64,000 nucleotides of DNA from Neoechinorhynchus agilis (Eukaryota; Animalia; Acanthocephala), in NCBI GenBank assembly GCA_051530055.1, contig CM121341.1, positions 3,276,151 through 3,340,150 on the forward strand, given 5' to 3'. The translations under genes and the position numbers were made by a program. The notes under the pieces were generated by a model. The model did no database searches, was not told where the DNA came from, and was given only the letters and a program-made list of their open reading frames with translations. Positions within the stretch are counted from its first letter, which is position 1. Each line of letters opens with the position of its first letter. Positions 10,751 through 64,000 of the stretch are shown here, in pieces.

Positions 10751-10919
10751 ATCTTGCGATATTAATTATAAAAATTTGCTGTGGTGAGACAACGCAGAGA
10801 TTAGTGCTTAGTTCCAATGTTTAGCTCTTGGACTGCACGTCGCCGAAGCCGAATGGAATGAATTAATGCATTTCAGGTTACGATACCAGAATTTATTGGG
10901 CCTCATGGAAAACGGAGCG

Positions 10920-37700: not shown

Positions 37701-37744
37701 AGTCAATTTGGATTAGCGATATTCACTCAGAAATAGATTTATAT

Positions 37745-37782
37745 TGAAAATTTTCGGCCTTTTCGTTGGCCTTCTTCAGTCA
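37745..37782 (-). ncRNA. Minimal type I hammerhead ribozyme motif, family B
   Basis: UGA-CUGAAGA-A-GGCC-AACGAAAA-GGCC-GAA-AAUU-U-UCA, starting 3 nt after the stop codon of the GIY-YIG ORF. Confidence 0.75.
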
Positions 37783-37785
37783 GAT

Positions 37786-38196: not shown

Positions 38197-38559
38197 TTTG
38201 TCACTATCGATTCGTTTGATCAGGGTTTCTATTTTAGAGTTCCATTGATCACTTACGTCTAATGGAGAAATTGCCCAGAAAACTGTAAACTGTATGAGGT
38301 ACTTCCTACATTCTTTCGACTACAGTCTGTTGCGTTTGGGTTCGATGGCTCAAAATACCAAAAGTCGATGCAATTCTGGTTGTTGGAAAACACAATTAAG
38401 GAACTCCAAAAAGAAAAGAAGCATCTAGAACGTCAATTAGAGAACAATCGTAATATACTAGAAAATGGTGGGGAAGGGAATTTTGGATTTCGGGAAATCG
38501 GGGGCGGAGGTGAGGGAGATGGGGGCTGCATTGTTTGTTGCGGGTGGTGGGTTATATAT

Positions 38560-46541: not shown

Positions 46542-48354
46542 TTTAATCTTAAATAGCAAAATCTACGCGTAAAAAGATTTACGGAGAATGATATCAACAC
46601 TCGATTTAGAGATCAATCGGATTAAACGAAAAGCGATATGGTGTTTTGCGTTCTTTTTCTGGTCCTAATAACCGGCTGATCCGATTAACCGAAGATTCAA
46701 CCGTACTTAACATTCCTTTGACTTCTTTTAATCACTAAAATCCACTAATAATGAACCCCGTCGAGGTTCCACGATCCAACGTCGCAGGATCGAAATATCA
46801 AATCAATAAATTCTTAATTTCATTTATCTCTCCTATCGACAAATAACAATGAATTATCTTTTCAACATAAAAAAACTTCTAACACACTTCTAATCCTTAC
46901 ATATCGACATTTTAACCTTCCTTAAAATCTATTCAATCACTTTATGAACTCAAAAGAGCATTAAATTACAAAAAGACTTGTTTTGCACAAACAAATGATC
47001 GAAAATGAATTTATGATCTTTTAAAACACCAAAGATTCTAAATAGAACCAGGAAAACTCTCAACCTTCGAAAATGCGATTTTTGAATACCTAAAAACAAA
47101 GTCGTGGGGATCGTGGATTATTATCGTCGGAGAAAGGAAGAGACACTTTCTTTTCGTAGTCTCACCAACCCTGGACTCAAAAATTCACTAATTTATTTCC
47201 GGTATTTCATTTTGGATAATTCCGAAATTTTCGCAAGGTTTTAGTGCATTTTTGAATTCGGGGTTGGCAAATTTACGAAAAGAAAGCAATTTTTTTCAAA
47301 TTAAGTTTACGAAAGCTACTTGATGACCAACAGAAGTTTGGTACCGAATAAATGGTTTGTGTCATTTTTTCTTAACGAGATAATCGACCGACTAATTCGG
47401 TGACCAAGATGAATTTTATACTCATCTCGATTTTAAGAGCTATGAATATACTTGAGACTAGTAAAAATCAAGGTTAAAAGTTTGAGAATTTGGTTCTGGA
47501 AAACAAGTTGGCCTTTGGTTTTAATCAGCGTAGTGACGTAATGTACACGGAAGAATCTTATTTGGAATAAAGTAATCTTCGAATTAAATTAAAGAATGAT
47601 GATATAGTGAAAACAAGCGCTCTTTCGCCCCTCTCCTATCTGCAATACATAGAATTTGCACCTAAAATCTAGCACCAAGCAATTTAAAATCAATTTTTGG
47701 GAACAAAAGTACATAATGACAGCTTTTGAGGTTATCAATTAAACGTCAACTTTCACTGTCACACGTCTCACATCTTAATTTTCGAGATAATGACATCGCA
47801 CCAACCTTTGATCTGAATTCTTTCGTGTGTGTCTCAACGTCCTCTTGTAATATGTATCCACCTCAACGTATATGCAAACTTCTCTTCCTTTTTCTCTCTC
47901 CTTGTGAGCTCCGTAGTGTTTTAGTAGGTGCAAAATCGGGAGATTTTACGAGGCGATATTGGACTCTCGTAAAAATCGTAAACGATTCCTGCGGTGCCTT
48001 ATATTGCTTAATTTTGTTCCTTAATAACATTATCGGAGCACTAGGAACAAACAACCATCTTAGAGGCTAACACTTCCGAGGGCTTGTTACTAAAAAGTTT
48101 AGTTTAAAGGTTGAGCGGTTTGAAGGAAACGTCAAAAATCAATGTGAAGAATCATACTTTTTTCCAATTTCTATTCGTACTTTTCACGTGTATTTCGTAG
48201 CCTCACAATCTCTCCTGCCGACAGTCTATCCCTTTTCTGACCTTTTCAGGGTGAGGGAGAGTCCCCGAAGAAGGCGTGAAGCGGCGAAATTCTGACAAAA
48301 TTAAAAAAAAACATCGTACTCGGGAACGTTTTGGGAAAATCTATCTGTAACAAC

Positions 48355-51300
48355 GACCGAATTCCTTGAACAAATCGGAACTCGAGTTTTTATGAGGACC
48401 CAAATGGAGAAGGAGTGAACGAACCGATAAAAGTTCATTTGTAGCCATTCTTCTTTGAAATGTTGATAATATTTCATTTTTTTAATTATATAACCCTTAT
48501 TCAAGTACTAAAAATCGTTCATTTTGTTGCTTCAATGATGAGCGTTTATAGATTATTGGATATACGTCGCTGACGATTGATGATTTTCTTTTTCTGAGAA
48601 GCACAAATGCATCTTAGGGTCCGAGTCTTTTTTTAGGGCAACAACAAACATTTTCAAAGACTCAATGATGATGATAATTTTTATCTGATTAAGTGAAGAA
48701 AAATCATTCGCCATTCTGAGAGTCTTTTTTAATGCAAATGGACAACATTGGAAATTTGTATCAAATTCCACTATGTAACCTTGCAATCCACCCAAAAAAA
48801 GGACCGAATTCCTTGAACAAATCGGAACTCGAGTTTTTATGAGGACCCAAATGGAGAAGGAGTGAACGAACCGATAAAAGTTCATTTGTAGCCATTCTTC
48901 TTTGAAATGTTGATAATATTTCATTTTTTTAATTATATAACCCTTATTCAAGTACTAAAAATCGTTCATTCAGTTGCTTCAATGATGAGCGTTTATAGAT
49001 TATTGGATATACGTCGCTGACGATTGATGATTTTCTTTTTCTGAGAAGCACAAATGCATCTTAGGGTCCGAGTCTTTTTTTAGGGCAACAACAAACATTT
49101 TCAAAGACTCAATGATGATGATAATTTTTATCTGATTAAGTGAAGAAAAATCATTCGCCATTCTGAGAGTCTTTTTTTAATGCAAATGGACAACATTGGA
49201 AATTTGTATCAAATTCCACTATGTAACCTTGCAATCCACCCAAAAAAGGACCGAATTCCTTGAACAAATCGGAACTCGAGTTTTTATGAGGACCCAAATG
49301 GAGAAGGAGTGAACGAACCGATAAAAGTTCGTTTGTAGCCATTCTTCTTTGAAATGTTGATAATATTTCATTTTTTTAATTATATAACCCTTATTCAAGT
49401 ACTAAAAATCGTTCATTCAGTTGCTTCAATGATGAGCGTTTATAGATTATTGGATATACGTCGCTGACGATTGATGATTTTCTTTTTCTGAGAAGCACAA
49501 ATGCATCTTAGGGTCCGAGTCTTTTTTTAGGGCAACAACAAACATTTTCAAAGACTCAATGATGATGATAATTTTTATCTGATTAAGTGAAGAAAAATCA
49601 TTCGCCATTCTGAGAGTTTTTTTAATGCAAATGGACAACATTGGAAATTTGTATCAAATTCCACTATGTAACCTTGCAATCCACCCAAAAAAAGGACCGA
49701 ATTCCTTGAACAAATCGGAACTCGAGTTTTTATGAGGACCCAAATGGAGAAGGAGTGAACGAACCGATAAAAGTTCGTTTGTAGCCATTCTTCTTTGAAA
49801 TGTTGATAATATTTCATTTTTTTAATTATATAACCCTTATTCAAGTACTAAAAATCGTTCATTCAGTTGCTTCAATGATGAGCGTTTATAGATTATTGGA
49901 TATACGTCGCTGACGATTGATGATTTTCTTTTTCTGAGAAGCACAAATGCATCTTAGGGTCCGAGTCTTTTTTTAGGGCAACAACAAACATTTTCAAAGA
50001 CTCAATGATGATGATAATTTTTATCTGATTAAGTGAAGAAAAATCATTCGCCATTCTGAGAGTCTTTTTTTAATGCAAATGGACAACATTGGAAATTTGT
50101 ATCAAATTCCACTATGTAACCTTGCAATCCACCCAAAAAAAGGACCGAATTCCTTGAACAAATCGGAACTCGAGTTTTTATGAGGACCCAGGAGAAGGAG
50201 TGAACGAACCGATAAAAGTTCATTTGTAGCCATTCTTCTTTGAAATGTTGATAATATTTCATTTTTTTAATTATATAACCCTTATTCAAGTACTAAAAAT
50301 CGTTCATTCAGTTGCTTCAATGATGAGCGTTTATAGATTATTGGATATACGTCGCTGACGATTGATGATTTTCTTTTTCTGAGAAGCACAAATGCATCTT
50401 AGGGTCCGAGTCTTTTTTTAGGGCAACAAAAGAAACCTAAAATTAAGTACTCGTTGCAGACCAAACATTTTCAAAGACTCAATGATGATGATAATTTTTA
50501 TCTGATTAAGTGAAGAAAAATCATTCGCCATTCTGAGAGTCTTTTTTTAATGCAAATGGACAACATTGGAAATTTGTATCAAATTCCACTATGTAACCTT
50601 GCAATCCACCCAAAAAAAGGACCGAATTCCTTGAACAAATCGGAACTCGAGTTTTTATGAGGACCCAAATGGAGAAGGAGTGAACGAACCGATAAAAGTT
50701 CGTTTGTAGCCATTCTTCTTTGAAATGTTGATAATATTTCATTTTTTTAATTATATAACTCTTATTCAAGTACTAAAAATCGTTCATTCAGTTGCTTCAA
50801 TGATGAGCGTTTATAGATTATTGGATATACGTCGCTGACGATTGATGATTTTCTTTTTCTGAGAAGCACAAATGCATCTTAGGGTCCGAGTCTTTTTTTA
50901 GGGCAACAAAAGAAACCTAAAATTAAGTACACGTTGCAGACCAAACATTTTCAAAGACTCAATGATGATGATAATTTTTATCTGATTAAGTGAAGAAAAA
51001 TCATTCGCCATTCTGAGAGTTTTTTTAATGCAAATGGACAACATTTTAAATTTGTATCATATTTCACTATGTAACCTTGCAATCCACCCAAAAAAAGGAC
51101 CGAATTCCTTGAACAAATCAGAACTCGAGTTTTTATGAGGACCTAAAAGGGGACATTCTTTGTAGATTAACAAATAAACGTTTTATTATAAAATTTTTGA
51201 CAATTCGACGGGTTCTATAAAAGACTTCTACAACCATCTCGCCCCCCTTTGTAAGTTGTGAACGAAGCGATAAAAGTTAATTTGTAGCCATTTTTCTATC

Positions 51301-51470
51301 ATAAAATGTTGATAATATTTCATTTTTTGAATTATATAACCCTTATTCAAGTGCTAAAATTCGTTCATTCAGTTGCTTCAGTGATGAGCGTTTATAGATT
51401 ATTGGATATACGTCGCTGACGATTGATGATTTTCTTTTTCTGAGAAGCACAAATGCATCCTGGGATCCGA
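48355..51470. repeat. Tandem array, unit about 447 bp (478 bp with an insertion), six full units plus a divergent seventh
   Basis: Anchor ccgaattccttgaacaaatc at 48357, 48804, 49251, 49697, 50145, 50622 and 51100. Confidence 0.95.
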
Positions 51471-51749
51471 GAACTCTCTTATTGAGTATTCATAATTAAA
51501 ACATATGACAAAATTTGACGAAAGGGAGATGAGGTTTTTCAAAGCGCGTTTTACAAACCTAAATATTTGCATGTTCTTTAGTATGTAGAAGTCAAAATGT
51601 GTTAAAAACACAAGCAATATTCATCTCATCATAAAGCGAGAATTATGTTGTAAATTCCTTATAAAAATTGCACATTTCTTTAAATTTGAATGATCCGATA
51701 TTTTCAATTTGTTGGGAGATAAATATGATTAGAAATCAGATTTTAATTA

Positions 51750-52800
51750 ACGAGGATTCATGCCCGACAGAAGCACAATCGACGCAATATTTTTGCTAAG
51801 GCTGCTGTATGAGAGGTTCGGTGAGATGCTGTAGTCGTGCACAGTGTGGCGTACGACACGGTTCCTCGAGATCTGGTGTGAGCATTCTTCAGGAAAAGGA
51901 ATTGCTCCGAACAAGGTCGCCGCGATCCAAGCGATGTATCGAGAATGCTACACCTGCATGCGATGCCACAGCGGAACGACCGACTATTTCCGAGTATCCG
52001 TGGGTCTGCAACAGGGTTCGGCCCTTAGCCCATTCTTGTTCACGATCGTGATGGACGTCCTAGGAAATGCGGAAAGAGAAATGAACCCACCATGGATGAT
52101 GCTATTCGCGGACGATTTAATGCTCACAGCTAGGGACGTGGACACGCTCAGGAAGTTGCTGGAAAACAGCGATTAGAGAGCAACTGATTGAGAGTGAGAA
52201 GGCGCAAAACGAAATACAATGGGGTCGGGTAACCTCGATATGCAAGGAATTTAGATTGAAAAGATCTTCAAATATTTGGGCAGTATGTTGAACATGCAAT
52301 GTGAGCTCGCACCAGAGATCGGACAAAGAGTTCAATGCGTGTATAATAACTGGAGGAAGACAATTGGCATCCTTTGCGATAAGCGTCTCCCGAACAAGCT
52401 TAAATGACGGGTGTACAAGGCAGTAGTGGGAACCGCCATGCTCTACGGAGCAGAAACGGTGGCTACGAAGAAGGAAGACGTTCAACGATTAGCCGTCAAC
52501 GAAATGCGGATGCTGAGATGGTCCGCAGGATTGCCACGCAAGGATCGAGTGCCCAATGAGGAGGTGCGAAGGCTGCTTGCTATCGAGCCGACCGAGGAGG
52601 TAATCGCTAAGAGGTGGATGCGATGGTACCTGCAGGTTACATAAGCAGATGAAGACGCCTTGCATGGAGAATCGAGCTCGAGAAGAAAAGGAGAAGAGGG
52701 AGGTCCAATAAGAGGTGGAAGGACAGTGTGAGCGGAGATATCAATACGCTGGAAAAGGATAATAACAAAGACGAAAGCCGCCAATGCTTAAAAGAACGAC
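51750..52800 (+). mobile_element. RTE-clade LINE RT fragment, decayed
   Basis: GFMPDRSTIDAIF, AYDTVPR, VGLQQGSALSPFLFTIVMDVL, PWMMLFADDLML, YKAVVGTAMLYGAETV, EMRMLRWSAG. Confidence 0.92.
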
Positions 52801-53279
52801 CTCTCAAACGAGAGAAAAGTTCAAAGAAATGTTGTTGTTGTGAGATAAAGATTTATTTTAAAAATTTACGTTGATAGGCTCGCTAAACAACCTTTTTGGC
52901 TAATTTGCAAAAAGCTAAGGCGGTTGAATATCGAACGTTCTATCGTCGTTTTTCGTTGACCGAGTAATTGTATTAAAAATCGGTCTTTTACTATTGTCTT
53001 TATTTTTAAACTTTTTGAAAAAATTTTTAATTTCTTTAATTATTTTTACTTTTTGTGTTCGTTGTTTATCGAACCAACAATCGACGAGATTAAAGAATTT
53101 AGCGATTATTTTTTATTTTACTGCCTTTTGTTCATGTAGGGATAACTTTAGAGATTTCTACTTAAGCAAGTCTCTCGAAATCAATCCTTGATGCTTTTAC
53201 CAAAAATGTGATAAAGCTTCGGCAAATTGAGGTCAAAATGTATTGTTTACTATATAAAGTAGAAAGGGTAAGAAGCGAG

Positions 53280-53800
53280 AAAACTTCATAGAACCGTACG
53301 TTTTCGTTCGTTATTCGTTTCACCAATGCTTTCTTCAACCGCGTGAGGCCTGTGTTCAACAAAGAAGAAAGCGAGATGTTCTTGTTCAAGAGCGTTAGAC
53401 GGAAGCTTTCAAATATGAGTTCCGGTCGTATTCCGCGCAACATTCTAATGCCGTTATTGGTGATATTGATCACATTTGCGATCATTGCTATGCTAAGAGA
53501 TATATATCACATCTTTCGCCACTGCAACCAATACTAGAGGAATTTTATGAATTCATGTCTGCAGGTACTCCACAATAGAACTATAACCCACAGAACTTTG
53601 GACGGTCGAGACAATGTTGAACCTCCCAGGCTCTACAATGGTGCACACCTTTGTTTTGAAATGAGATGCGATATTGGTTGGTAAAGGACATGATGTGTTT
53701 ATTTCGCGCATTCCCCTCATCCCAACGGATTTGCCTTTTACGTTTGGACGCCTACAGTTTACAGTACGGATAACATTTGCAATAAAAGGAGAAATGAGAG
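53280..53800 (+). mobile_element. Helitron RepHel remnant (N-terminal piece fused to PIF1 helicase piece)
   Basis: Plus-strand frames give NVEPPRLYNG and ILVGKGHDVFISRIPLIPTDLPFTFGRLQFTVRITFAI (Helitron helicase pattern NLDPPRLCNG...IPRIPLIPTDLPF.FKRLQFPVRLAFAMT); upstream AFKYEF..YS.H...IGDIDHICDHCYAKRY resembles the Helitron N-terminus. Confidence 0.78.
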
Positions 53801-54161
53801 GTAGAAATTGAAGAGGATGAAGAGAATGAAGGCACTTTTGGAAGATTAGAGAGAAGTGTTTTTCTAAGGACACGAGTTCGGAGGATCAATTAACCATTAA
53901 TAATCGCCATCAATTATTCTTCTAAGAAGTATAATAAACATTATAGAGTAAGGTGGTCCGAGCAGAAGGAATATCTCGAATCCCTCAAGTCTATTCCTAC
54001 TGGCGTTTAAGTCTAAAAAACGTGAATCTGTTCAAATAGATTCGGATTGAAAAAGAGCGGACATTTATGATTCAGGCTTCCAATTTAAACAGCCTCCTAC
54101 GAATTATATTCGTTTCACATGAATACATTAAATAAATCTCGCTTGAGAGTTAACTTTATTA

Positions 54162-54368
54162 TTTAGCATCATTAAATTTTAGTCTATCCCTTTCTTGTCC
54201 GGCTTATTTTTTAGGCATACTGAGGATCCGGAGGAATGTACAAACTCTTAAACCGACATTAGAGACTATGTGGTTATATCACTTCTCTGATGTATAATTG
54301 GTTTGGCTTTATGCCTAAAAAAAATAAGCCGGACAAGAAAGAGATAGACTGAAATTTAATGATGATAA
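54162..54368. mobile_element. MITE-like inverted repeat, arms of about 57 bp
   Basis: agtctatccctttcttgtccggcttattttttaggcata / tatgcctaaaaaaaataagccggacaagaaagagatagact. Confidence 0.8.
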
Positions 54369-54447
54369 AACAATACCGGCTTGCCAGTAAAACTTAAATT
54401 TTTTTTTATTATTTAGAATTCGTCATCTTTAAAGGGAACGCTTTATT

Positions 54448-54486
54448 GAGGATGTTTCGAACTTCGTCGGGTTTATCATCAGTTCT
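54448..54486 (-). ncRNA. Degenerate hammerhead-like motif, family C
   Basis: CUGAUGA-U-AAACCCGACGAAGUUC-GAA-ACAU-C; homologous to 25505-25546, with GAA intact but stems weakened. Confidence 0.4.
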
Positions 54487-55149
54487 AAAAAACGAGGTTA
54501 TCGATATGCGAGAAGAGAATTATTATTTGGAAGTCTTCAACCGATAAAGAGTTTATTAAAGACGTTAATCTCGTTGTTTTTTTAGATCGAATGATGCCTC
54601 CCTGCGAGGTTCGCAGAACGTTTTTAACAAACAAGCTGAAGACTTCTAAATAACACTTTTAAACGATTGGTAATTTTTATAACTGGTGATAAAATCGAAG
54701 AACTTTGAAACGACTTCAATAAAACGTTGAAACAACAAATTTAATCAATTCCTAGATCGATGACGTCATGTTCAGTTTACGTTTCTTCCGGAGAAATGTG
54801 ACGGCGATAAAATAATCGTCCCAATTTTTTTATCAGACGTCACTTTTTCGTCAAATTAATCGCAGATTTCCAATGGACATTGCACTAAAGCTTTCAAAAT
54901 CCTTGTTTCTTTTCGATCTTCTTACCACTTTGATTACGTCATGTGTATTGTTTTCCGGAAACGAATATCTGTGTTTTTCGATAATTCTAAACTTGATGCC
55001 GAATCAAATATTTCGATTTTGATTATTGGTTTATGTGAAAATGAACTGGATAACGCAGGAAATGTTACATTGATCAAAATACTACGGGACTTTTCTTTTG
55101 AAGTCTTTATGGCCTATAATTCGATAAATTTGCGAATGATATGAGCGTT

Positions 55150-56100
55150 TCACGCTTTTATCAACTCCAATTTCAATCAAACTTGAAATGGGACTCGCAC
55201 ATCACTCTCTCCCTCAAGCACAACCCCTTTAAAAATTATCTCCTCAAGTCCCGATCTCTACAAATTTTACTTACCTGAATTCCTCTAAATGCGTGGAAAT
55301 GATCCCATCTCTCTCCCGCAACCCCACATCCTCCCCGGAGCTTCTAAATGACATTCTACGAGTAACCTCCCTGAGAATCCTGGGTCTCCAATTTCGATCA
55401 AATTTGAACACAGAACTTCCTTCCACTCCACTTCACTCGCATTGTAGATTACACCCTGAAGAAGCCGTTGGACGGCGAAAGCTAGGTGTTTCAATAAAAT
55501 CTCTCTCTTTCAGTCGGATTGTCAATCAAACAATCATCAATAGATAAAACATGCGGCTGAACAACCAAGCAGCGCTTAGTAATCTTACCGATTTCTGCAT
55601 CAATCACAAACTCCATCTCAATTTCTCTAAATGCTTCGAAATGATGCCCTCTCTCCCGCAACTCCACAACATCGCCTGAGCTTCTAAATGACATTCTACG
55701 AGTATTCTGGGTATCCAATTTCAATCAAATCTGAATTAAGACTCGCACATCACTCTCCCTCGAGCTTCTGACATTTAGGAATCCTTTCACCCGACCTCTA
55801 CAAATTTTACTTCTTTATTTTACCCTCCCTCACCTACGGTTACCCCGTCTTTTGCAACCTTTCCAAATCTAAAATCCGTCGTCTTGAAATGTTTCATAGA
55901 AGAGCATCCAAAATTTTCACAGCTTACTTTCCCCCCTCTCACCGAATGCTTTTATGAAATTTTAAAAAACAATGAAACCGCCTCTCAACCTTACCACCAC
56001 AATTTTTACTACATTTTATTCCTCTTTTCACACGAGTACAACATTCGTAATTCCAACCTCGCATCTCTCACTGCTCATTTTTCCATACTGCCTAATCTTC
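55150..56100 (+). mobile_element. CR1/L2-group LINE 3' remnants
   Basis: Pyrimidine-rich; reverse complement of parts of 36430-36830 and 10950-11400 (PSLTYGYPVFCNLS, RRLEMFHRRASK). Confidence 0.8.
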
Positions 56101-56729
56101 TTGACCTGAAATGAACCTGATAAAAATCCCAACCTCACAATCTCTTCTACAAACAATAAACAACTTTCCAATCCGAACGGACTCGTATTCCACTCCAAAA
56201 TAAACGACCGCATATATTTTACTAATCAGAACTCGATTTTTTATGTGGATCCGAATGGAGAAACAAAAATTGTACAATCTTCCAGCCATAATAATGGACG
56301 ATATTTTTTGTTCTAAATTATTTAGTAATATTTTTACCTTTAATTATCCTATACATTTTTTCAAATGTTTAAACTCTAAGCTTTAAGATTACTTCGCGTA
56401 CTTGCTGTGTAAAAATACACATATAAAATCCGATCAGTTACAAAAAATTTAAATAAGCGTTGAGGTTTTAGATTCCTAAAATTAAAAATTGAACGGTTCA
56501 CGATCGTTACTTATGAGTATTCATTTCCAGTTTTCTAAGCTTAATGGATTTTTATGTGATAATTCAATATCTCTAGATTGGGAAGATGAAAAGGATTTAT
56601 ACACCTTGATTGAATTTGAGACGCCTCTTCTAAAATTGGTTCCATAAAATTGTCAGTTTTGTTTTTAAATTCTTAACTTGATGATTCTCGCGATCGTAGC
56701 ATCAGTGGCCAACCTTTCACTCGTTTCAG

Positions 56730-58031
56730 ATGTTCGAACATTCTCCTATTCCTAAAAGTGAATTTTGGAATAGTAAATGCGCGGATCCAGTCTACGTTAG
56801 CGAACTTCGCAACAAAGCTCGAATCGTCCGTGGACGATACCGATCTGCTTCCTTAATCCAACTATGGATATTTCTCCACCTTTTTGGTTTACTCTCAGCC
56901 TTGGTGTTTATTTACACGCGAACTGAATCCAGTGGAATTCTGTTGAAACTTTTAACAAAGGCAGTAACTATGGTGCTCGCATTTTGTCTATGCGTGGATA
57001 TTGTTTCTTTTATTCAAGTCTATGCGGAAGAGCCATTGAAATTGACTTCAATTGAGATGTCTGTAGTGGGTGTGAAAGAAGGGGAACGTGGATTTGAGTT
57101 AGTTGACGAAAATAAAAAGTCTTCTAAGGTGGACCCTCCTCAGAAATCAACAGATTTATCTAATGTAACATCGTCATTAGTGACGACTAATGTAGTCCAT
57201 CGGAGAAAACATCAGAACGGATGCTCGGGAAAACTATCTGGGACCACTTTACGGTATCAGCTGGACTCTTCGTTCAATACGTCCTCGTCGCCAACCAGGT
57301 TTTCTTTCTTCAGTTCTCCTGAAAAATCCGCATGGATTCCACAGCAACCAGTCGGGGAAATCCCCTCGTGGTGTCCCAAGATCCGGTTTAATCATTCATG
57401 GAACACTCTTGCTCACTATAGAAACAATCTGATTGAATGGATGCAACGAAGTCTTGTATCGCGATTAGTCAACGACCAATTAGAACCCGAAACGAAAAAA
57501 GTATGGATGAAAGCACTTCCTGAGTTCAAAAGCTATGTCACTTCAAAACTCAATTCCATCAACAACAAAGGAATCCTCAGAAGTCTTAAAGAAGAGAAAA
57601 ATAGGTCACCTCAAATGGAATCCCTTCCGTTTGAATCCGAAATTCTGTTTTGTCTTTGGTGTGGGTATTTCGATGGAATCGTGTTCCGATCGCTTCCTAA
57701 TGAACGCCCTTTTTCGGATCGATTCGTATTGAACACCTTTCGCCCGGAGAACTTTCATCCAGTCTGTTATCGAAATGAAAAAACAAAAATCTGCATTTTG
57801 AAAGATGATCTTGGTGGTAATAAGATGCCGGTTTATGGATTTCTACGTAAAGGCGAACAAATTCGCACAAATACGCACCATTATTCGTTTTTGGATGCTA
57901 TTATTGGATTTCTATATATTGTGAAAGAAGAATGGAACGGGTGGATCGATCAGCTTAATCTTAAATCGGAAAAAATTACAGATATTTTGGAAATATTTTC
58001 AGAAAGAGAAGTATTGGGACCTCGAGAATGA
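56730..58031 (+). CDS. TMEM209: TMEM209-like nuclear envelope membrane protein, intronless
   Basis: Two N-terminal TM helices, S/P-rich middle, YRNNLIEWMQRSLVSRL, ESEILFCLWCGYFD and C-terminal FLDAIIGFLYIVKEEWNGWIDQLNL match the TMEM209 pattern as recalled. Confidence 0.72.
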   Translation: MFEHSPIPKSEFWNSKCADPVYVSELRNKARIVRGRYRSASLIQLWIFLHLFGLLSALVFIYTRTESSGILLKLLTKAVTMVLAFCLCVDIVSFIQVYAEEPLKLTSIEMSVVGVKEGERGFELVDENKKSSKVDPPQKSTDLSNVTSSLVTTNVVHRRKHQNGCSGKLSGTTLRYQLDSSFNTSSSPTRFSFFSSPEKSAWIPQQPVGEIPSWCPKIRFNHSWNTLAHYRNNLIEWMQRSLVSRLVNDQLEPETKKVWMKALPEFKSYVTSKLNSINNKGILRSLKEEKNRSPQMESLPFESEILFCLWCGYFDGIVFRSLPNERPFSDRFVLNTFRPENFHPVCYRNEKTKICILKDDLGGNKMPVYGFLRKGEQIRTNTHHYSFLDAIIGFLYIVKEEWNGWIDQLNLKSEKITDILEIFSEREVLGPRE

Positions 58032-58139
58032 ACGTTTTGTGAATTCAAGTCGGTTTTTTTTCTAAAAATGATCGTTAGTGCTGAATGAATTGTTTTTGTA
58101 AACATTTTAGAAATCGGTTTCGACCATTCATCGTGGAAA

Positions 58140-59030
58140 CAAGTGACGTTACTCTCCAACTACGGAGGTTCAGGGCTCAGACTCGTGGAGGACGTGATTT
58201 TGGCAAGTCGAGAGAACTCCCTTAAGATCTACCCGGAGTCCAACGTAGAGCATTTTAATAATGCTGTCTCCTTATGGACCTCTAAAGTAGGACAAGCCGC
58301 AGTACTCCATAAGTGCCAAAAGCAGTCATCGTGGGACTTACCGATCGTGCCGAAGGTTCACAAATCACTTCTAGACCAATTGGGCGAGAGGTCACGTTCG
58401 CGACTCATGGCTTGCTCGACGAAGGAGTCCGGCGCCTGGGACTCTTTTGGACAGCGAAACATTCCGGGTAGCTTTCTCTTTGAGATTGGGTACCACCATC
58501 AGCTTCCCACGCAAATGTCGCTGCGGCTAGCAATTAGACGCCAAAGGATTAAATGCTCTATCATGTCCTAGACATGCCGAAATCAACTCAATCCTGAGTA
58601 GAGCCCAGACCTCCATCAACATTCCAAACATCTTGGAGCCGAGCACTCTGTGTAGGTCTGATAGTTAGAGCCCAAATGGTGTGTCAGTCTTCCCTTGGAG
58701 CCGAGGGAAGTGCCTCTTACGGGATGCAACCTGCACCGACACCATGGCCAAGTCCTTTGCTGATTTAGCCAGTAAAGGCCCCGGTGCTGTGGCGACCGCA
58801 GCGGAGCGTCGGAAACCGGAAAAATACGTTGAGCTGAAGGAGAGCCATTTCGGGATCGAAACGTTCGGGGCCCTCGGAGAATCCCCACTTTAGCTGGTTT
58901 CAGATATAGCAAAGAGGTCGGTGGCGATGAAAAAGGGTCCCATGCGACAGCATTCTTTAGACAAAACATCTCCCTCGCAGTACAACGACGGAATACTGCC
59001 AGTGTGAGAAAAACCGCGGCTACACAGAAC
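58140..59030 (+). mobile_element. CRE-like LINE 3' fragment, decayed
   Basis: SRLMACSTKESGAW; SVFPWSRGKCLLRDATCTDTMAKS...AERRKPEKY..L...FGIETFGALG. Confidence 0.85.
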
Positions 59031-59236
59031 ATTATCTTTTAAAATTTGTAAATTTTAATAAAATTAATAAATTAATCTCTTAAATTCTGCGCAAGGTCAA
59101 CGCTTTTTGGTAATTTTGAGGATGCATAGAAAAGGTCTACTTTCGGTTGAATTTCGTGTACAAAAAATGTAAAATTAAGTTCTTTGATTTTTCGACCAAA
59201 GTGACTAAAAGAATTATAATGAACATCGCCCAGAAA

Positions 59237-60042
59237 TTAAATCAATATTTTATTTTCTACCATGTCCTTTTCCAAATGATCTATAGACATATCAATGCTT
59301 TTCAAGGCTGTTGCAGTGTACGGAGGTAAGTCCGCTTTCCTGAGAATTCGTTGAATTTTTAGAATACAATCATAGCATGATTTATGGCGGTCCTCGTATC
59401 CCGGTTCGAGACAATTCGCCGCTAAACGTGCCAGCTCCGCAACAAAACATACTAAAGCATTTAGATAAATCTTTGGATGTACATCAAAAGGAGCCTTAGA
59501 AAAGATTGTCTTTATCTCTTTAACTACATCATCATAATCCGGAAAGTCGGTATTCTTCAAAAATGCGTTCATGAGCGTACAGAAAATCAGTCTTTCGCAC
59601 ATATCATCTCTTTTATTCCTATGTGGAATTAAGATTGTGAAATTCCTAGGATTAAATAGTTATCGAACCGATTATAGGTGCATTTACAGAAATCCTCTAA
59701 GTCCATAGTGCTCACAATATCGCGAAGTTTTTCCATTGAAGACTCAAAGGATTCTGTAAGAGTATCGGAATCTAAAAATTGACATTGAAGAGTCTATTGG
59801 AAATTCACATATTAACGAAATATACAAACCATTCCGTAGTGTATGGATTTTAAGAAAATTCACTTTCATTTGTCCGATTTTCTCAAAGAGTTCAATGATA
59901 TCATCCTGCTGAAAGCTAAGGGATGTTCAAGTTTCGCTGTGGAGTAGATAATTACCGTGCCAGACTCATCCTTTGCATCTTTCATCTCTTCTGCCTTTTT
60001 TAGTAGTTGTGGAAATGACAAGGTAGATTTGTTTAGAGTCAT
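59237..60042 (-). CDS. Spliced gene of unknown function (helical protein), probably 4 exons
   Basis: ATG 60042 MTLNKSTLSFPQLLKKAEEM...; GT-AG introns at 59909-59955 (47 nt), about 58 nt near 59772-59829, and a 23- or 50-nt intron near 59620-59668 join to ORF 59237-59602. No family recognised. Confidence 0.6.
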
Positions 60043-60289
60043 CTTTAAAGGATAGCTCAGTTTTGATTTTAGAAGGAAAAGAATGCTTTAATTTCCACTA
60101 TTTAGATTCAACGAAGGATAAGCACGCTTAAAAGAATGGAATTTTTCAAATATTTTAAATAAAGAGCGAATTGCAAATGTATTTTTCCAAATAAATTTCC
60201 GGCATTCTAAGAATTTATTTGTGGTAATTGGAAGAATAAGCGCTTTTAACCCGTAAAAACGATACATCAATAATTCAAAAAAACACGTT

Positions 60290-60900
60290 GGTCAGACCCT
60301 TGGTTTGAGAAGGAGTTCCGAAACCTTTTTGGTTTCTGTGTAGACGCCAAAGAACGAGGCCGCAACCAAATGGTCCAGTGGTTTTACTTAACGCTTCAGG
60401 TACTAAATTGGATGACTGTTCCTTCGGTCTCGCTTCGGCACTAGACTTCGACGTGGCTTTCTCAATCCTGCAAGGTGCGAACTGTCCCACGGACTCAAAT
60501 GCCCCAAAGCGATAGCCAGTCACAATCGCCACGGCATAGTGAATACTCTAAAACGTAAAGTTTGGGCAAATATCTCGCATAAGTAAAGATAAAGGGAAAA
60601 AACCGGACTTCCCATCAAAAGTTCCGTGGGAAAGAGGCCGTCTCCTTGAGGCTTCATCTGCCGAATAGAAATGCTAAAAGGAAATTGTCCCTTTCAGTTC
60701 CAAGAGCCGGTAAAGTGGCAAAAAGAGCACTGAAAAATGAGAAGTACAAATGGCTCGATTCGTCTCGCTCTACTCCTTTTATAACCTCTTTCGCCATTGA
60801 GAACATTGGTGTCGTCGGACCAAGCACTGCAGAATTTTTAGCCACGGTTGGAAAATTGTTATTTTTATTGGAGAATCAGCGATTTAGAATGGAAATGCTG
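60290..60900 (-). mobile_element. Two short CRE-like RLE remnants
   Basis: AIVTGYRFGAF; reading frames with AER..LSHLYFSF.AIETFG-type motifs. Confidence 0.5.
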
Positions 60901-61439
60901 GATGCATCTTCGGTGCAATGGACCACCAAGATGTTCCCCCGTCATGATCTCAATTCGTTAACATAAATTCAATTTCCTGAGCACAAAAGTAGATAAGTGA
61001 ATTCGATCAACATTCGAAGATTTCAAAAAAAGAACACGAGAATTTAAAATAAAGGGCCCAAATAAATTTCCGACATATTAAGAATTCTAGCTGTGGTACT
61101 TCGAAGTAATAAAGCAAATTTCTCATTATCAAGTAAGGGAGTTATTGATCGATTCAATCGTAATGAACTCTTTATCATAATCTCAAACATTTTTAAAGAC
61201 CTGGTATTATCGGCTAAACGAATGTGAATTGCTATGCATTAAAATAAACGATTTAATCTAATTTTATTTATAGTGCGACCTTAAGGATATGCAGGAATAA
61301 ATTTTATTTTTAAACAGTTAAAGATAAAATCCATGAGTATATGGCGGTGGGGAAAAAATTTATATCAAAGAATTACTTTAATTGAAATATTTCGTCCAAT
61401 CACGCTGAACTTTTTCAGTCAATTATTGTTCGTAAGACA

Positions 61440-62621
61440 ATCTTTATTGTAGAGAAAATGCAACGTGGGAACATTTCTTTCCTTCCACTTTGCGTTGATT
61501 TTTCGAAAGAAGGTTTTAAAAGCCAATAAATCTGTTAGAAATCGGTCACTAATTCTTTTTTTAACTAACTTTTCTTACAATAATAAAGTAAAAAACGTGC
61601 AATCACCACCGTCCACAAAATTGGAGCTTCTCTCCTTCCTCGGCTGTCGCTATCACGCTAGCAGCATTGCCTCGTTGTACTCCGAGCGATATATTTTGTC
61701 GCAGGAATACACCTGCTCGTTCGTCGCCGGTCGTTTCTCTCAATTTCTTCGAGAGATCCTGGAGCAGAGTGCCTAGCTGCCAAGCGCTCCATACGTCTCT
61801 ACCCCAAAGGGGACAAAATAGTGAGCCCTCGATAAGTGAAGATATTTCCGTATTTTCCTCCCTTCCGCCGCACTGGCTGCAGCTCCAGCGATTTCGAGAG
61901 AATAGGGAATGTTGCTTACTGCGAGGGACGTGGCGTCCCAGAGAAGGCATTTGCCCTTGGACGAAATATTTCAATTAAAGTGATTCTTGGATATATAATT
62001 TTTCCCCACCGCCACATATTTTTAAACAGTCTAGAGTTGATGTGCAAAGTCGTTTTCATAATTTAAATGGGGTGTTCACTTTCAAATAATAATTTAAATT
62101 TTTTAAGAATGTGGCGGGAGAGCAAATGCCTTCGCTGGGACCTCGCACAACATTCCCTACTCTCTCGAAATCGCCGGCGGTGCCGCCAGTGCAGCGGAAG
62201 GGAGGAAAATACGGAAATATCTTCACTTATCGAGGGCTCACTATTTTGTCCCCTTCGGAGTAGAGACGTTTGGAACGCTTGGCAGCTAGGCACTCTGCTC
62301 CAGGATCTCTCGAAGAAATTGAAAGAAACGACCGGCGACGCACGAGCAGGTGTATTCCTGCGACAAAATATCTCGCTTGCAGTACAACGATTCAATGCTG
62401 CCAGCGTGATGACGACAGCCGAGGAAGGAGGGAAGCTCCAATTTTGCGGACGGTGGTGATTGCACGTTTTTTTACTTTATTATTGTAAGAAAAGTTAGTT
62501 AAAAAAAGAATTAGTGACCGATTTCTAACAGATTTATTGGCTTTTAAAACCTTCTTTCGAAAAATCAACGCAAAGTGGAAGGAAAGAAATGTTCCCACGT
62601 TGCATTTTCTCTACAATAAAG
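61440..62621. repeat. Large inverted duplication (arms of about 500 bp, spacer of about 160 bp) of a CRE-like LINE 3' end plus flank
   Basis: tctttattgtagagaaaatgcaacgtggg (61441) mirrors cccacgttgcattttctctacaataaaga (62621); the ORF track shows mirrored ORFs (ISLGVQRGNAASV / ISLAVQRFNAASV). Confidence 0.9.
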
Positions 62622-62858
62622 ATTGTTTGAAGAATAGAAATCGTTTTAGTAAAAGCTGTTTTTTAGGAAACGAACAACAGCAAAAGGTTGAATTTAAGAG
62701 CTTAGAAGTGTTAAATTAGGATGAAAAAGATATTAACCCCGGAATCAACCGTAATTAAAGACTAAAATAGTTCATTCGGTCGATAGAATCGAAAATTAAT
62801 ATTTGAACGTCTTAGAATTATCAGCATATTTACGGATCCAATGAGAGTTTTTCTTTAG

Positions 62859-63721
62859 ATGGCGATTCGTCACAAATGTAACCAATGTAATCGATTATTT
62901 TTGCGTCCTAAAAAACTTGCTGATCACGTAAAGATAATCCACAACAAAGAACAAATCCATCGATGTGTTGAGTGTGGAAAACCGTTCACTACTTGCTACC
63001 ATCTTCGTCGCCACAATGAAAACGTCCATAAAAAGAGCCAAGTTTCACAAGTTGCAATCGAGTGTCCGCAGTGTAACAAAGTTTACTCTTCATCGAGTGC
63101 TTTGAACAAGCACTTGAACAATGTATGTTCAAAATACAAATGCAATGAAGATCCATTCTGTAATGAGTCTTTCTCAAAAAAGACTCAACTGAAGAAACAT
63201 CTTGAGCTTGTCCATAACATAAGTCCGGATCTTCTCCACCGATGCCAAGAATGCGGAAAACGTTTCCCGTATCTCAGTAAGCTTAAAAGACACGAGAAAG
63301 TAAACTAAGGTTTATTTCGCCCAAGATCTTGATGGCGGAATAAATCTTGGGTTTTGTTGTCCACAACGGGTACGTTTGTGACCATTGTAACTGTGTTTTC
63401 CCATGTTTTTCACAACTGAGGGATCATCGATCGGATCAACATAAACGGTACAAATGCCGTTTTTGTCAAAAGTCCTCATTTGAAGATGCAATTGACCTTG
63501 CCAATCACATTAAGCACGAATGCGAATCGCGACCGAGGTTTACTTGTGAACTATGCAATCGAGTGTTTCGCTATAAGCGAAATCTGAAATCTCACATACG
63601 AGCGAATCACTCTGAGATTGAATTTCTCTGTTCGGCTTGTTCAGGAAAATTTAGATATGCTTCCACTTTGAAGCGCCATAAGCAGAAACATTGCCCTTGT
63701 CAAAGAATGAAAGATCCTTGA
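62859..63721 (+). CDS. GTF3A: TFIIIA-like nine C2H2 zinc-finger protein interrupted by a 59-nt hairpin insertion
   Basis: Nine fingers after joining 62859-63299 to 63359-63721 (267 aa); finger 4 CNEDPFC..SFSKKTQLKKH, finger 5-6 junction LKRHEKVHNGYVC (Xenopus TFIIIA LKRHEKVHAGYPC as recalled), finger 8 NLKSHI. Confidence 0.8.
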
Positions 63722-63800
63722 TTGATCTCTGATGATGGGACGAAAAATAGTTAATTAGTAAGACAGAAGGTTTCCGTGGTTGAAACAAATGTTGGTTTTT

Positions 63801-63837
63801 GATCAATATTTCGGAGTTTTACTCCTTCTTCAGGGTC
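63801..63837 (-). ncRNA. Minimal hammerhead ribozyme motif, family E
   Basis: GACC-CUGAAGA-A-GGAGU-AAA-ACUCC-GAA-AUAU-U-GAUC: intact core and 5-bp stem II; one mismatch in stem I. Confidence 0.6.
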
Positions 63838-63859
63838 CAATGAAGCACACGCAAGTAAT

Positions 63860-64000
63860 AATCGACAGAGAAAATCCTCTAGGGCAAATCAAAGTATACT
63901 TTTGGTGAAAATAATCCCTTGGCGTGGCATATATTTGATTTATTTGAGATATTTCGCGAGGTAACCTCGCCTCATCAGTCATCTAAAAATTTGTTTTTCA
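63860..64000 (-). mobile_element. Penelope-like element end (family A), truncated by the window edge
   Basis: Matches 31100-31200 and the reverse complement of 31440-31500; contains the family A hammerhead at 63945-63981. Confidence 0.8.
63945..63981 (-). ncRNA. Minimal hammerhead ribozyme motif, family A
   Basis: Identical to 884-920. Confidence 0.75.

What the first reader, a model, noticed from the sequence alone, without database searches (positions are those of the whole stretch)
63300..63358. TFIIIA gene split by a 59-nt hairpin with no AG acceptor
Seen: after CAC GAG AAA (HEK) the sequence runs GTAAACTAAGGTTTATTTCGCCCAAGATCTTGATGGCGGAATAAATCTTGGGTTTTGTT before GTC CAC AAC GGG TAC. It has an in-frame TAA and shifts frame. 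63307-63321 pairs with 63334-63348 (15 bp, two G-U pairs) around a loop holding the palindrome CAAGATCTTG. Removing exactly 59 nt (GT..TT, or slid along the GT repeat to TA..TG or AA..GT) restores C-x2-C-x12-H-x3-H and the RHEKVHNGY junction, giving nine fingers. The only AG inside (63324-63325) gives a stop (ATC TTG ATG GCG GAA TAA). Established: TFIIIA is normally essential for 5S rRNA transcription. Inference: if this is the only copy, the insert must be removed by non-canonical splicing, non-spliceosomal cleavage-ligation, or ribosomal bypassing (Val GTA to Val GTC, stop two codons after take-off).
Basis: partly seen in the sequence, partly recalled or inferred. Interest (0 to 1): 0.88.

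Follow-up and report, generated by a model that had tools for sequence, protein, structure and literature searches.

The report
Hairpin insertion splitting a worm TFIIIA gene
The only recognisable TFIIIA gene found for the fish parasite Neoechinorhynchus agilis is interrupted by a 59-base hairpin that no normal splice can remove; it is most likely a recent DNA insertion that breaks this copy, and public RNA data could quickly show whether the cell cuts it out by an unknown route.

Summary
At 63300-63358 a 59-nt insert interrupts an otherwise intronless ORF. Removing exactly 59 nt gives a 267-aa, nine-finger protein that is a collinear TFIIIA orthologue. The insert folds into a strong hairpin, carries an in-frame TAA and shifts the frame. 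No GT/GC-AG or AT-AC intron restores the protein.

The window is Neoechinorhynchus agilis (Acanthocephala), CM121341.1:3339450-3339508. The public annotation calls only the truncated 149-aa ORF.

Evidence against a special splicing system:
- All 9 neighbouring introns I reconstructed are ordinary GT-AG.
- This is the only hairpin splitting two long ORFs in about 148 kb.
- The insert is a near whole-length palindrome flanked by a 2-nt GT repeat.
- Gar, beetle and a plankton orthologue have no intron at this site.

Evidence keeping RNA-level removal alive:
- No close paralogue is annotated.
- All downstream zinc ligands are intact.
- The insert starts GTAAAC.
- Its length matches local introns.

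Best reading, about 0.55: a lineage-specific foldback DNA insertion that disrupts this allele. Non-canonical excision, about 0.25, is untested. Public RNA-seq (PRJNA1223661) would decide it.

The parts
62859..63299 (+). TFIIIA-like coding part 1: ATG to the AAA (Lys) of finger 5's H-E-K. It holds fingers 1-4 and finger 5 up to its first His.
   Evidence: ORF 62859..63308; finger map; collinear alignment with Xenopus TFIIIA and P0001.
63300..63358 (+). 59-nt insert. It starts GTAAAC and ends TTTTGTT, with no terminal AG in any of its three equivalent registers.
   Evidence: GC content is 0.37 against 0.40 for the flanking coding sequence.
63300..63301 (+). GT, the first copy of the 2-nt direct repeat at the insert borders. 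The second copy is at 63359-63360.
   Evidence: It could be a target-site duplication or microhomology; the chance probability is about 1/16.
63302..63354 (+). Imperfect 53-nt palindrome (AAAC...GTTT) that makes up nearly the whole insert.
   Evidence: Arm-to-arm alignment and the sequence itself. The arms differ by 2 transitions and 3 small indels.
63307..63321 (+). 5' arm of the core hairpin.
   Evidence: 13 Watson-Crick plus 2 G-U pairs with 63334-63348; MFE structure.
63322..63331 (+). Loop palindrome CAAGATCTTG, which contains a GATC.
63334..63348 (+). 3' arm of the core hairpin.
   Evidence: The sense-strand RNA folds at -22.7 kcal/mol and the antisense at -12.8.
63306..63308 (+). In-frame TAA. 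It ends the 149-aa product that the public annotation calls.
   Evidence: The gene is called at L005 16130-16579, which is window 62859-63308.
63339..63344 (+). AATAAA inside the 3' arm, a possible premature polyadenylation signal.
   Evidence: It is the only AATAAA in 63201-63800. Any function is inferred, not shown.
63359..63721 (+). TFIIIA-like coding part 2: the second His of finger 5, then fingers 6-9 and the TGA stop. It has no internal ATG before its last few codons, so it can only be made as a fusion with part 1.
   Evidence: ORF 63347..63721; finger map. All zinc ligands are intact, and the finger-8 motif NLKSHIRANH matches NLRSHIQSFH of Xenopus and NLSQHIRSFH of P0001.

Best explanation
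A roughly 57-bp foldback (near-perfect palindromic, MITE-like or repair-derived) piece of DNA has been inserted, with a 2-bp GT duplication or microhomology. It sits in the single coding exon of the Neoechinorhynchus agilis TFIIIA orthologue, between Lys and Val of finger 5's H-E-K-V-H. It is not a conventional intron.

In the assembled haplotype it puts a TAA three codons in, shifts the frame and adds an AATAAA. Transcripts of this allele would therefore encode only a 149-aa protein with four whole fingers and a fifth lacking its last His. They might instead be degraded or end early.

The four downstream fingers are still perfectly intact, so the event is recent. It is probably polymorphic in the pooled worms that were assembled. 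Function would come from an uninterrupted allele or from an unannotated copy.

Shown: the anatomy, the absence of any canonical splice solution, the conventional splicing of neighbouring genes, and the lack of an intron at this site in orthologues. Inferred: that the insert is not removed from the RNA, and that it is recent or polymorphic.
For: - The insert is a whole-length imperfect palindrome flanked by a GT/GT direct repeat. That is the shape of a DNA insertion, not of the local introns.
- The gene is otherwise intronless, like several neighbours (961-aa OGT, actin and a 527-aa convertase as single ORFs).
- The site has no intron in orthologues. Beetle TFIIIA is continuous there. The plankton orthologue P0001 is continuous there on a metagenomic contig. 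The gar intron lies 10 nt further downstream, and the gar exon reads CACGAGAAAGTCCAT, which equals the N. agilis flanks joined.
- All 9 introns reconstructed within 20 kb are GT-AG: translin 47/58/50 nt, G-patch 45/46 nt, LENG8-like 44/613/42/49 nt.
- Of 295 hairpin clusters in about 148 kb of this genome, this is the only one that separates two long open frames instead of lying inside one.
- No canonical intron restores the protein.
- The RNA-seq-guided BRAKER annotation calls only the truncated 149-aa gene.
- The assembly is a hybrid long/short-read consensus of pooled worms after haplotig purging, so a single haplotype's insertion can end up in the reference.
Against: - TFIIIA is normally essential, and no close paralogue appears among the proteins on record.
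- A pooled-sample consensus should favour the common allele, so a lethal insertion is not expected to be the one assembled.
- Both halves keep all 36 zinc ligands and have no other stop or frameshift.
- The downstream half has no start codon of its own.
- The insert begins GTAAAC and ends in a T-rich tract, and at 59 nt it falls within the 42-58 nt to 613 nt range of local introns.
- Both arm mismatches are G-U in the sense RNA, which folds at -22.7 against -12.8 kcal/mol for the antisense. The chance of that orientation is only about 1 in 4.
- No other copy of the element was found in about 155 kb, so a mobile-element family is not shown.
- If the palindrome arose perfect in place, its 5 arm differences would imply an age at which an unused downstream ORF should have decayed.
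Confidence: 0.55

Rival explanations
1. The insert is removed precisely from the pre-mRNA by a non-canonical route, giving the 267-aa nine-finger TFIIIA. One version is spliceosomal: the GT donor at 63300 is used, the T-rich tract defines a non-AG acceptor, and the hairpin holds the ends together. The other is a hairpin-guided, possibly non-spliceosomal excision like the inverted-repeat/direct-repeat introns of Amoebophrya or the nonconventional introns of Euglena.
For: - The gene looks single-copy and essential.
- The downstream fingers are intact and have no start codon of their own.
- It has a GTAAAC start, an intron-typical length and a TTTTGTT end.
- The junctions sit 2 and 4 nt outside the base of the extended helix.
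- The hairpin is much stronger in the sense RNA.
- Its layout, an inverted repeat plus a short direct repeat over the borders, matches Amoebophrya introner elements (PMC7789003). The sliding borders match what is described for Euglena (PMC12501133).
- From my own knowledge: C. elegans, which has similarly short introns, can splice at mutated non-AG acceptors (Aroian et al. 1993; the title is cited in papers found).
Against: - 0 of 9 neighbouring introns are of this kind, and it is unique among hairpins in about 148 kb. The known systems have such introns by the thousand.
- The Euglena signature N3CDG...CHGN5-6|R is absent in all three registers (signature, read against the sequence).
- GT-TT is essentially unknown for U2 introns.
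- An insertion that is not removed efficiently from the start could hardly be fixed in an essential gene.
- The annotation gives no sign of a full-length model, although BRAKER would not accept such a junction anyway.
Confidence: 0.25
2. The interruption is wholly or partly an assembly or consensus error. Either the real locus has no insert, or the real insert is a normal GT...AG intron whose last bases were miscalled in a palindromic, hard-to-polish stretch. For example, two bases could be missing before GTCCAC.
For: - The assembly is a MaSuRCA hybrid of ONT, a little HiFi and Illumina from pooled worms, then purged and Hi-C scaffolded.
- Palindromes are prone to poor short-read coverage.
- Everything about the insert except its last two bases fits a local short intron.
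Against: - A 53-nt imperfect palindrome is not a known artefact of these methods.
- It does not match the PacBio, ONT or Illumina adapter sequences as I recall them.
- A library ligation artefact at the central GATC would be a perfect palindrome, and this one has 5 arm differences.
- Hi-C reads were used only for scaffolding.
- The flanking 800 nt of coding sequence has no error.
Confidence: 0.12
3. Ribosomes hop over the insert by programmed translational bypassing. Peptidyl-tRNA-Val takes off at GUA (63300-02) next to the hairpin and a nearby stop, then lands on GUC (63359-61).
For: - There are synonymous Val codons at both borders.
- UAA lies one codon after take-off.
- A strong hairpin starts 3-5 nt after the take-off codon.
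- The gap of 56 nt is close to the 50 nt of phage T4 gene 60 (sequence).
Against: - The matched codons follow automatically from the GT repeat in phase 0.
- The codons are not identical, and the stop is not adjacent.
- From my own knowledge: bypassing is documented only in phage T4 and in Magnusiomyces mitochondria, never for cytoplasmic translation in an animal.
- An mRNA with a premature stop would be exposed to nonsense-mediated decay.
Confidence: 0.02

Closest known systems
MITE-like or foldback insertions in coding exons, e.g. the hairpin-forming inserts in buckwheat 13S globulin alleles GlbNC and GlbNB2 (PMC11061244, listed)
   Same: A short hairpin-forming insert sits in an exon. In that case one allele has most of its insert spliced out and still makes protein, while the other is a null. 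Those are the two outcomes at issue here.
   Different: No family of copies has been found for this insert (0 in about 155 kb). The direct repeat is only 2 nt and is not the TA, TTAA or 3-9 bp duplication of known transposon superfamilies. The host is an acanthocephalan and the gene is an essential one.
Introner elements and non-canonical introns of Amoebophrya (PMC7789003)
   Same: Inverted repeats of 8-20 nt pair the two intron ends into a hairpin. Short direct repeats overlap the exon/intron borders, and the ends are not GT-AG.
   Different: There they make up more than 60% of introns and form repeated families confirmed by RNA-seq. Here there is one instance, none among 9 neighbouring introns, a 2-nt rather than 3-5-nt direct repeat, and no RNA evidence.
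Nonconventional introns of Euglena (PMC12501133)
   Same: The ends are not GT-AG. Bases flanking donor and acceptor pair with each other. Direct repeats make the borders slidable. The authors suggest an origin from transposon insertion.
   Different: The genetically defined signature 5'-N3CDG...CHGN5-6|R is not present in any register of this insert. Those introns are 72% of all introns in a protist, not a single case in an animal.
Mirtrons (short hairpin introns of flies and nematodes; own knowledge)
   Same: It is a 59-nt unit that is almost entirely one pre-miRNA-sized hairpin, starts with GU and has short unpaired tails.
   Different: Mirtrons are defined by ordinary GT-AG splicing, and this insert has no AG. 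No Rfam miRNA family matches, and there are no small-RNA data.
Phage T4 gene 60 and mitochondrial 'byp' translational bypassing (own knowledge)
   Same: A non-coding gap of about 50 nt lies inside an ORF, with a hairpin and a stop next to the take-off codon and a matching landing codon.
   Different: The codons are synonymous rather than identical, and the stop is one codon away. There is no precedent in animal cytoplasmic translation, and the codon match is explained by the 2-nt repeat.
Plant TFIIIA P5SM cassette exon (a 5S-rRNA mimic with a premature stop; own knowledge)
   Same: It is a structured RNA element carrying a premature stop inside a TFIIIA gene.
   Different: That element is a bounded exon with canonical splice sites and mimics 5S rRNA. 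This insert has no significant similarity to 5S rRNA (p about 0.4) and no Rfam match.

Membership tests
TFIIIA (the protein encoded once the insert is removed) | Nine tandem C2H2 zinc fingers | tested here: met
   Nine fingers are present in the 267-aa joined product.
TFIIIA (the protein encoded once the insert is removed) | TFIIIA-specific finger 5/6 junction (H-x3-H-x-G-Y-x-C; Pfam PF22110) | tested here: met
   PF22110 scores 28.3 bits against a cut-off of 27 at residues 141-161, which span the junction. LKRHEKVH-GY is shared with Xenopus and P0001.
TFIIIA (the protein encoded once the insert is removed) | Collinear similarity to established TFIIIA proteins | tested here: met
   Identity is 29-37% over 83-97% of the length to vertebrate, Daphnia, beetle and Drosophila TFIIIA. 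The single-stretch match to yeast TFIIIA 8ffz has E = 1.5e-13.
TFIIIA (the protein encoded once the insert is removed) | Required for 5S rRNA gene transcription | not testable with these tools
   This is a functional assay. There is no 5S gene in the window.
U2-type GT-AG spliceosomal intron | GT (or GC) at the 5' end | tested here: met
   GTAAAC at 63300. Local donors are GTAATT, GTTTGT, GTTCGA, GTTTTG, GTGAGT, GTATGT, GTTGGA and GTAAGC.
U2-type GT-AG spliceosomal intron | AG at the 3' end in a register that keeps the reading frame | tested here: not met
   The ends are TT, TG or GT. None of the 352 frame-keeping canonical pairs gives the 267-aa protein.
U2-type GT-AG spliceosomal intron | Length and pyrimidine tract like other introns of the species | tested here: met
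   59 nt, against local introns of 42-58 nt and one of 613 nt. TTTTGTT precedes the 3' junction.
U2-type GT-AG spliceosomal intron | Excised from the transcript | not testable with these tools
   No N. agilis transcripts are in the collections searched.
U12-type intron | 5' RTATCCTT consensus with AT-AC or GT-AG ends | tested here: not met
   The 5' end is GTAAACTA, and no AT-AC pair restores the protein.
MITE or foldback DNA transposon insertion | Terminal inverted repeats | tested here: met
   The palindrome 63302-63354 covers nearly the whole insert.
MITE or foldback DNA transposon insertion | Target-site duplication | tested here: inconclusive
   There is only a 2-nt GT/GT repeat. The chance probability is about 1/16, and it is not the duplication of a known superfamily.
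MITE or foldback DNA transposon insertion | Multiple related copies in the genome | tested here: not met
   No other copy was found in the window plus about 90 kb of further N. agilis loci. That sample is only about 0.3% of the 46-Mb genome, which allows up to roughly 900 copies.
MITE or foldback DNA transposon insertion | Empty site in relatives | tested here: met
   The site is uninterrupted in beetle, in the plankton contig L006 and in the gar exon. No close relative was available.
Hairpin-bounded non-canonical introns (Amoebophrya, Euglena, Fritillaria types) | Inverted repeat pairing the ends, plus a short direct repeat over the borders, with non-GT-AG ends | tested here: met
   compared with the descriptions.
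Hairpin-bounded non-canonical introns (Amoebophrya, Euglena, Fritillaria types) | Present as a large class of introns in the genome | tested here: not met
   0 of 9 neighbouring introns, and only 1 of 295 hairpin clusters in about 148 kb splits two ORFs.
Hairpin-bounded non-canonical introns (Amoebophrya, Euglena, Fritillaria types) | Euglena code 5'-N3CDG...CHGN5-6|R | tested here: not met
   Positions 4-6 are AAC, ACT or CTA in the three registers, and there is no CHG 5-6 nt before the 3' junction (sequence).
Mirtron | Hairpin ends defined by GT-AG splicing | tested here: not met
   There is no terminal AG. The hairpin size would fit.
IRE1 (XBP1/HAC1) or tRNA-endonuclease (bulge-helix-bulge) intron | Both junctions in 7-nt CNGNNGN loops of twin stem-loops, or in 3-nt bulges either side of a 4-bp helix | tested here: not met
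   In the predicted fold the junctions lie in unpaired tails outside a single long helix. Neither junction has a CNGNNGN motif (sequence).
Programmed translational bypass (T4 gene 60 type) | Identical take-off and landing codons, with a stop directly after take-off | tested here: not met
   The codons are GUA and GUC, and UAA is one codon further on. A hairpin next to the take-off codon is present.

The most novel reading that the evidence does not exclude
The 59-nt hairpin is a true intron of a kind not described in acanthocephalans or their relatives. It would be a young, foldback-derived element, excised precisely from TFIIIA pre-mRNA although it ends in TT rather than AG. The hairpin and the GT direct repeat would define the cut. 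This could be the first glimpse of an introner-like, hairpin-guided splicing route in a bilaterian outside tunicates.
Probability: 0.2. Interest if true: 0.85.

Novelty: new member of a known kind. Interest (0 to 1): 0.42.

Why it matters
If the best reading is right, this is an ordinary event: a small foldback insertion that knocks out one allele of a gene in a draft assembly. Its practical value is then as a warning. The public N. agilis annotation holds a truncated 149-aa 'gene' that is really TFIIIA.

If the insert is cleanly removed from the mRNA, it would show that an animal with otherwise conventional short introns can excise a non-GT-AG, hairpin-bounded element from an essential transcript. 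That bears on two open questions: how new introns arise from inserted DNA, and how strict the AG rule is under intron definition.

The question is unusually cheap to settle. 74 RNA-seq libraries, a transcriptome and the genomic reads of this species are public.

Tried and rejected
- **Canonical rescue.** I enumerated every GT-AG, GC-AG and AT-AC pair that keeps one ORF. None restores the nine fingers. The mildest use the same GT with AG at 63471-72 (173 nt) or GT at 63269 with AG at 63419-20 (152 nt), and both delete finger residues.
- **-1 frameshifting.** GAGAAAG is not an X XXY YYZ slippery site, and the -1 frame meets a TAA at 63341-43 (sequence).
- **ADAR editing creating an AI acceptor.** No AA lies at a position that would keep the frame (sequence).
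- **5S rRNA or P5SM mimicry.** A by-eye resemblance to helix III and box C disappeared on testing, with p about 0.4 against shuffles and random 59-mers. Rfam at E up to 10 gave only two chance-level hits.
- **Sequencing adapters or a Hi-C ligation junction at the central GATC.** The palindrome is imperfect, and it does not match the adapter sequences as I recall them.
- **Ancient intron with a decayed acceptor.** The position is not shared with gar (10 nt off), beetle or the plankton orthologue, and two base changes would be needed.
- **Processed retrocopy.** There is no poly(A) remnant, and many neighbouring genes are also intronless.
- **Other copies of the element.**
  - There are none in the window at up to 3 mismatches.
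  - There are none in about 155 kb by blastn-short.
  - The four metagenome hits to a degenerate arm pattern are unrelated chance matches.
- **Searches that led nowhere.**
  - The exhaustive HMMER search was swamped by giant poly-zinc-finger proteins.
  - Two profile searches found no acanthocephalan or rotifer orthologue.
  - A window transposon ORF and Daphnia TFIIIA were not on record.
  - Channa gtf3aa turned out to be intronless and so uninformative.
  - The two N. agilis papers say nothing about introns, splicing or TFIIIA.
Full report
**Where the window comes from.** The actin ORF at 7165-8295(-) is encoded with exactly the same protein sequence on chromosome CM121341.1 of assembly GCA_051530055.1. 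Its cluster-mates are named Neoechinorhynchus agilis and Pomphorhynchus laevis. Locus L005 is identical to window 46730-64000 and runs 4 kb further. Locus L007 fixes the offset at window position + 3,276,150, so the insert is CM121341.1:3,339,450-3,339,508. The species paper describes the following (PMC12690905):
- The genome is 46.2 Mb.
- It is a MaSuRCA hybrid assembly of ONT, a little HiFi and Illumina reads from pooled worms, purged of haplotigs and scaffolded with Hi-C.
- It was annotated with BRAKER using RNA-seq.

**The observation.**
- *Frame.* The 59 nt at 63300-63358 follow CAC GAG AAA and precede GTC CAC AAC GGG TAC. They contain TAA in frame at 63306-08 and shift the frame.
- *Hairpin.* The arms 63307-21 and 63334-48 form 13 Watson-Crick and 2 G-U pairs around CAAGATCTTG.
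- *Strength.* The hairpin is far stronger than chance, with z = -3.9 and 0 of 200 shuffles as good. It lies in the lowest 0.2% of all 59-nt windows of this sequence, and most of the others in that tail lie in GC-rich transposon remnants.
- *Details to add.* There is a second AG at 63308-09. The complementarity extends to AAAC/GTTT at 63302-05/63351-54, so nearly the whole insert is one imperfect palindrome. The insert also carries the only AATAAA within 600 nt.

**The gene.** Removing the 59 nt gives a 267-aa protein with nine C2H2 fingers.
- Pfam's TFIIIA-specific finger model PF22110 matches residues 141-161, straddling the junction, above its curated cut-off.
- The protein aligns finger by finger with Xenopus TFIIIA and with P0001, an orthologue from a Tara Oceans metagenome. 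They share LKRHEKVH-GY-C at the junction and NL-SHI--H in finger 8.
- A profile without any vertebrate sequence still retrieves proteins named TFIIIA from Daphnia, beetles and Drosophila, at 30-35% identity over 93-96% of the length.
- A profile that includes Xenopus retrieves vertebrate TFIIIA at 29-37%.

The identification as the TFIIIA orthologue therefore stands. No protein closer than that is on record for N. agilis or P. laevis. The exact 149-aa product is encoded at one place only. The public annotation calls the gene as that 149-aa ORF, stopping at the TAA inside the insert.

**Can ordinary splicing deal with it?** No. Of the 352 GT-AG, GC-AG or AT-AC pairs that keep a single ORF from the ATG to the TGA, none yields the 267-aa protein. 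All of them remove conserved finger residues. The three equivalent registers of the exact 59-nt removal end in TT, TG or GT.

**How this species splices.** I reconstructed every nearby intron that could be pinned down by ORF continuity, annotated product length or homology.
- Translin has three introns of 47, 58 and 50 nt.
- The G-patch gene just beyond the window has two, of 45 and 46 nt.
- A LENG8/SAC3-like gene has four, of 44, 613, 42 and 49 nt.

All nine are GT...AG, and none is a hairpin. I also took every 60-nt stretch folding at -18 kcal/mol or better in about 148 kb of N. agilis DNA (the window plus four loci fetched around other actin copies). That gave 295 clusters. Of these, 43 have at least 60 open codons on both sides. 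Of those 43, 42 simply lie inside a continuous ORF, and only the TFIIIA insert separates two frames. So if a special hairpin-removal system exists, it is not common here.

**Is the site an old intron position?**
- In spotted gar gtf3ab a GT-AG intron lies in phase 1 inside the Gly codon of VHRG|Y. That is 10 nt downstream of the N. agilis site. The gar exon reads CACGAGAAAGTCCAT, the same as the N. agilis flanks joined.
- In the beetle Anoplophora the finger 5/6 junction is continuous, and the nearest intron is before finger 5.
- The metagenomic (genomic DNA) contig encoding P0001 is continuous there too.
- The N. agilis gene has no other intron, like OGT, actin and a convertase nearby.

The insert is therefore lineage-specific, not an inherited intron with a decayed acceptor.

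**What the insert looks like as DNA.** It is a 53-nt imperfect palindrome plus TGTT, bracketed by GT/GT. That is the shape of a foldback or MITE-like element, a transposon footprint, or a captured snap-back fragment joined with 2 nt of microhomology. I could not show that it belongs to a family.
- There is no second copy in the window, even at 3 mismatches.
- There is none in about 155 kb in total.
- A scan of the metagenome collection gave only unrelated chance hits.

The sample is only about 0.3% of the genome, so up to roughly 900 copies cannot be excluded.

**Weighing the explanations.**
- *For a plain disruptive insertion:*
  - the DNA-insertion anatomy;
  - the new position;
  - the uniformly canonical neighbours;
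  - the one-off status;
  - the difficulty of fixing, in an essential gene, an insertion the spliceosome cannot remove;
  - the base rate, since any haploid reference built from wild animals carries a few loss-of-function alleles, and a scan that looks for oddities will find them.
- *For RNA-level removal:*
  - the apparent single-copy, essential nature of the gene;
  - the flawless downstream half, with all zinc ligands, no stop, and no start codon of its own;
  - the intron-like GTAAAC start, T-rich end and length;
  - a hairpin that is much more stable in the sense RNA (-22.7 against -12.8 kcal/mol) because both arm mismatches are G-U. That has a 1-in-4 chance of arising at random.
- *A further point that cuts both ways.* If the palindrome arose perfect in place, its five arm differences would argue that the insert is old and the gene is still under selection. 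If it was inserted already imperfect, they say nothing.

I put the disrupted-allele reading at about 0.55, precise non-canonical excision at about 0.25, an assembly or consensus error at about 0.12 and ribosomal bypassing at about 0.02. The error reading includes two bases missing from a real GT...AG intron.

**Comparison with known systems.**
- The layout matches Amoebophrya introner elements (inverted repeats pairing the ends, short direct repeats over the borders, non-GT-AG ends; PMC7789003). It also recalls the base-paired, slidable borders of Euglena nonconventional introns (PMC12501133).
- It fails the Euglena sequence code, and it lacks the abundance that defines both systems.
- It has the size and shape of a mirtron but not the AG.
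- It resembles the T4 gene 60 gap only in features that the GT repeat and the hairpin produce automatically.
- It has no bulge-helix-bulge or IRE1-type junctions.
- It has no significant likeness to 5S rRNA or to any Rfam family, unlike the plant TFIIIA 5S-mimic exon.
- The nearest everyday parallel is a hairpin-forming MITE-like insert in an exon. In buckwheat 13S globulin alleles one such insert is largely spliced out and another gives a null (PMC11061244).

**Verdict.** Nothing here shows removal of the insert, and the surrounding evidence points to an ordinary, recent DNA insertion in one haplotype. The matter can be settled in an afternoon from public reads by counting joined-junction, filled-border and empty-site k-mers in PRJNA1223661 and in the genomic libraries.

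Noticed in passing
window 61338-62641: A large inverted repeat lies 218 nt upstream of the TFIIIA start codon. Its arms are 61422-61914 and 62148-62641, 93-97% complementary. They carry mirrored ORFs (61603-61974 on the minus strand, 62067-62459 on the plus strand) whose C-terminal motif resembles tyrosine-recombinase (DIRS-like) retroelement tails. Related ORFs recur at 10414-10824, 22147-22786, 29513-30139 and 58143-59032.
   Followed up: partly
window 30934-31020: A perfect inverted repeat of about 35 bp (ATATTTCGTCCGTCTCGTCGGACTTCTTCAGGTCA ... reverse complement) folds at -63.9 kcal/mol. It is far stronger than the TFIIIA hairpin and lies next to a transposon-like ORF.
   Followed up: no
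window 48355-51147: A tandem array with a 447-nt unit, about 6 copies at 95% identity. Its function is unknown.
   Followed up: no
window 3363-6248, 7165-8295, 25816-27399, 15061-16092, 35097-36128: Many conserved genes here are single long ORFs without introns: OGT at 961 aa, actin, a subtilisin-type convertase at 527 aa, and two forkhead genes. The two forkhead genes are a diverged local duplicate pair about 20 kb apart. A 168-aa reverse-transcriptase fragment is also duplicated at 415-921 and 16678-17184.
   Followed up: no
L010-L014 (CM121341.1 and CM121342.1): The identical 376-aa actin protein is encoded at five places in the assembly. Three of them lie within 220 kb of each other, often next to forkhead genes, which suggests segmental duplication.
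   Followed up: no
window 36000-44000: This region has a strong positive GC skew (0.28-0.40) and overlapping minus-strand ORFs rich in Pro, Ser and Leu. They include endonuclease and reverse-transcriptase-like LINE fragments.
   Followed up: no
window 44729-44770 (minus strand): The LENG8-like gene has a 42-nt GT-AG intron whose length is a multiple of three and which holds an in-frame TAA. If retained, it would truncate the protein.
   Followed up: partly
L008 (Channa argus) versus L009 (Lepisosteus oculatus): The fish paralogue gtf3aa is intronless in Channa (1068 nt for 355 aa), while gar gtf3ab has introns. The 'a' copy of teleosts may therefore be a retrogene.
   Followed up: no
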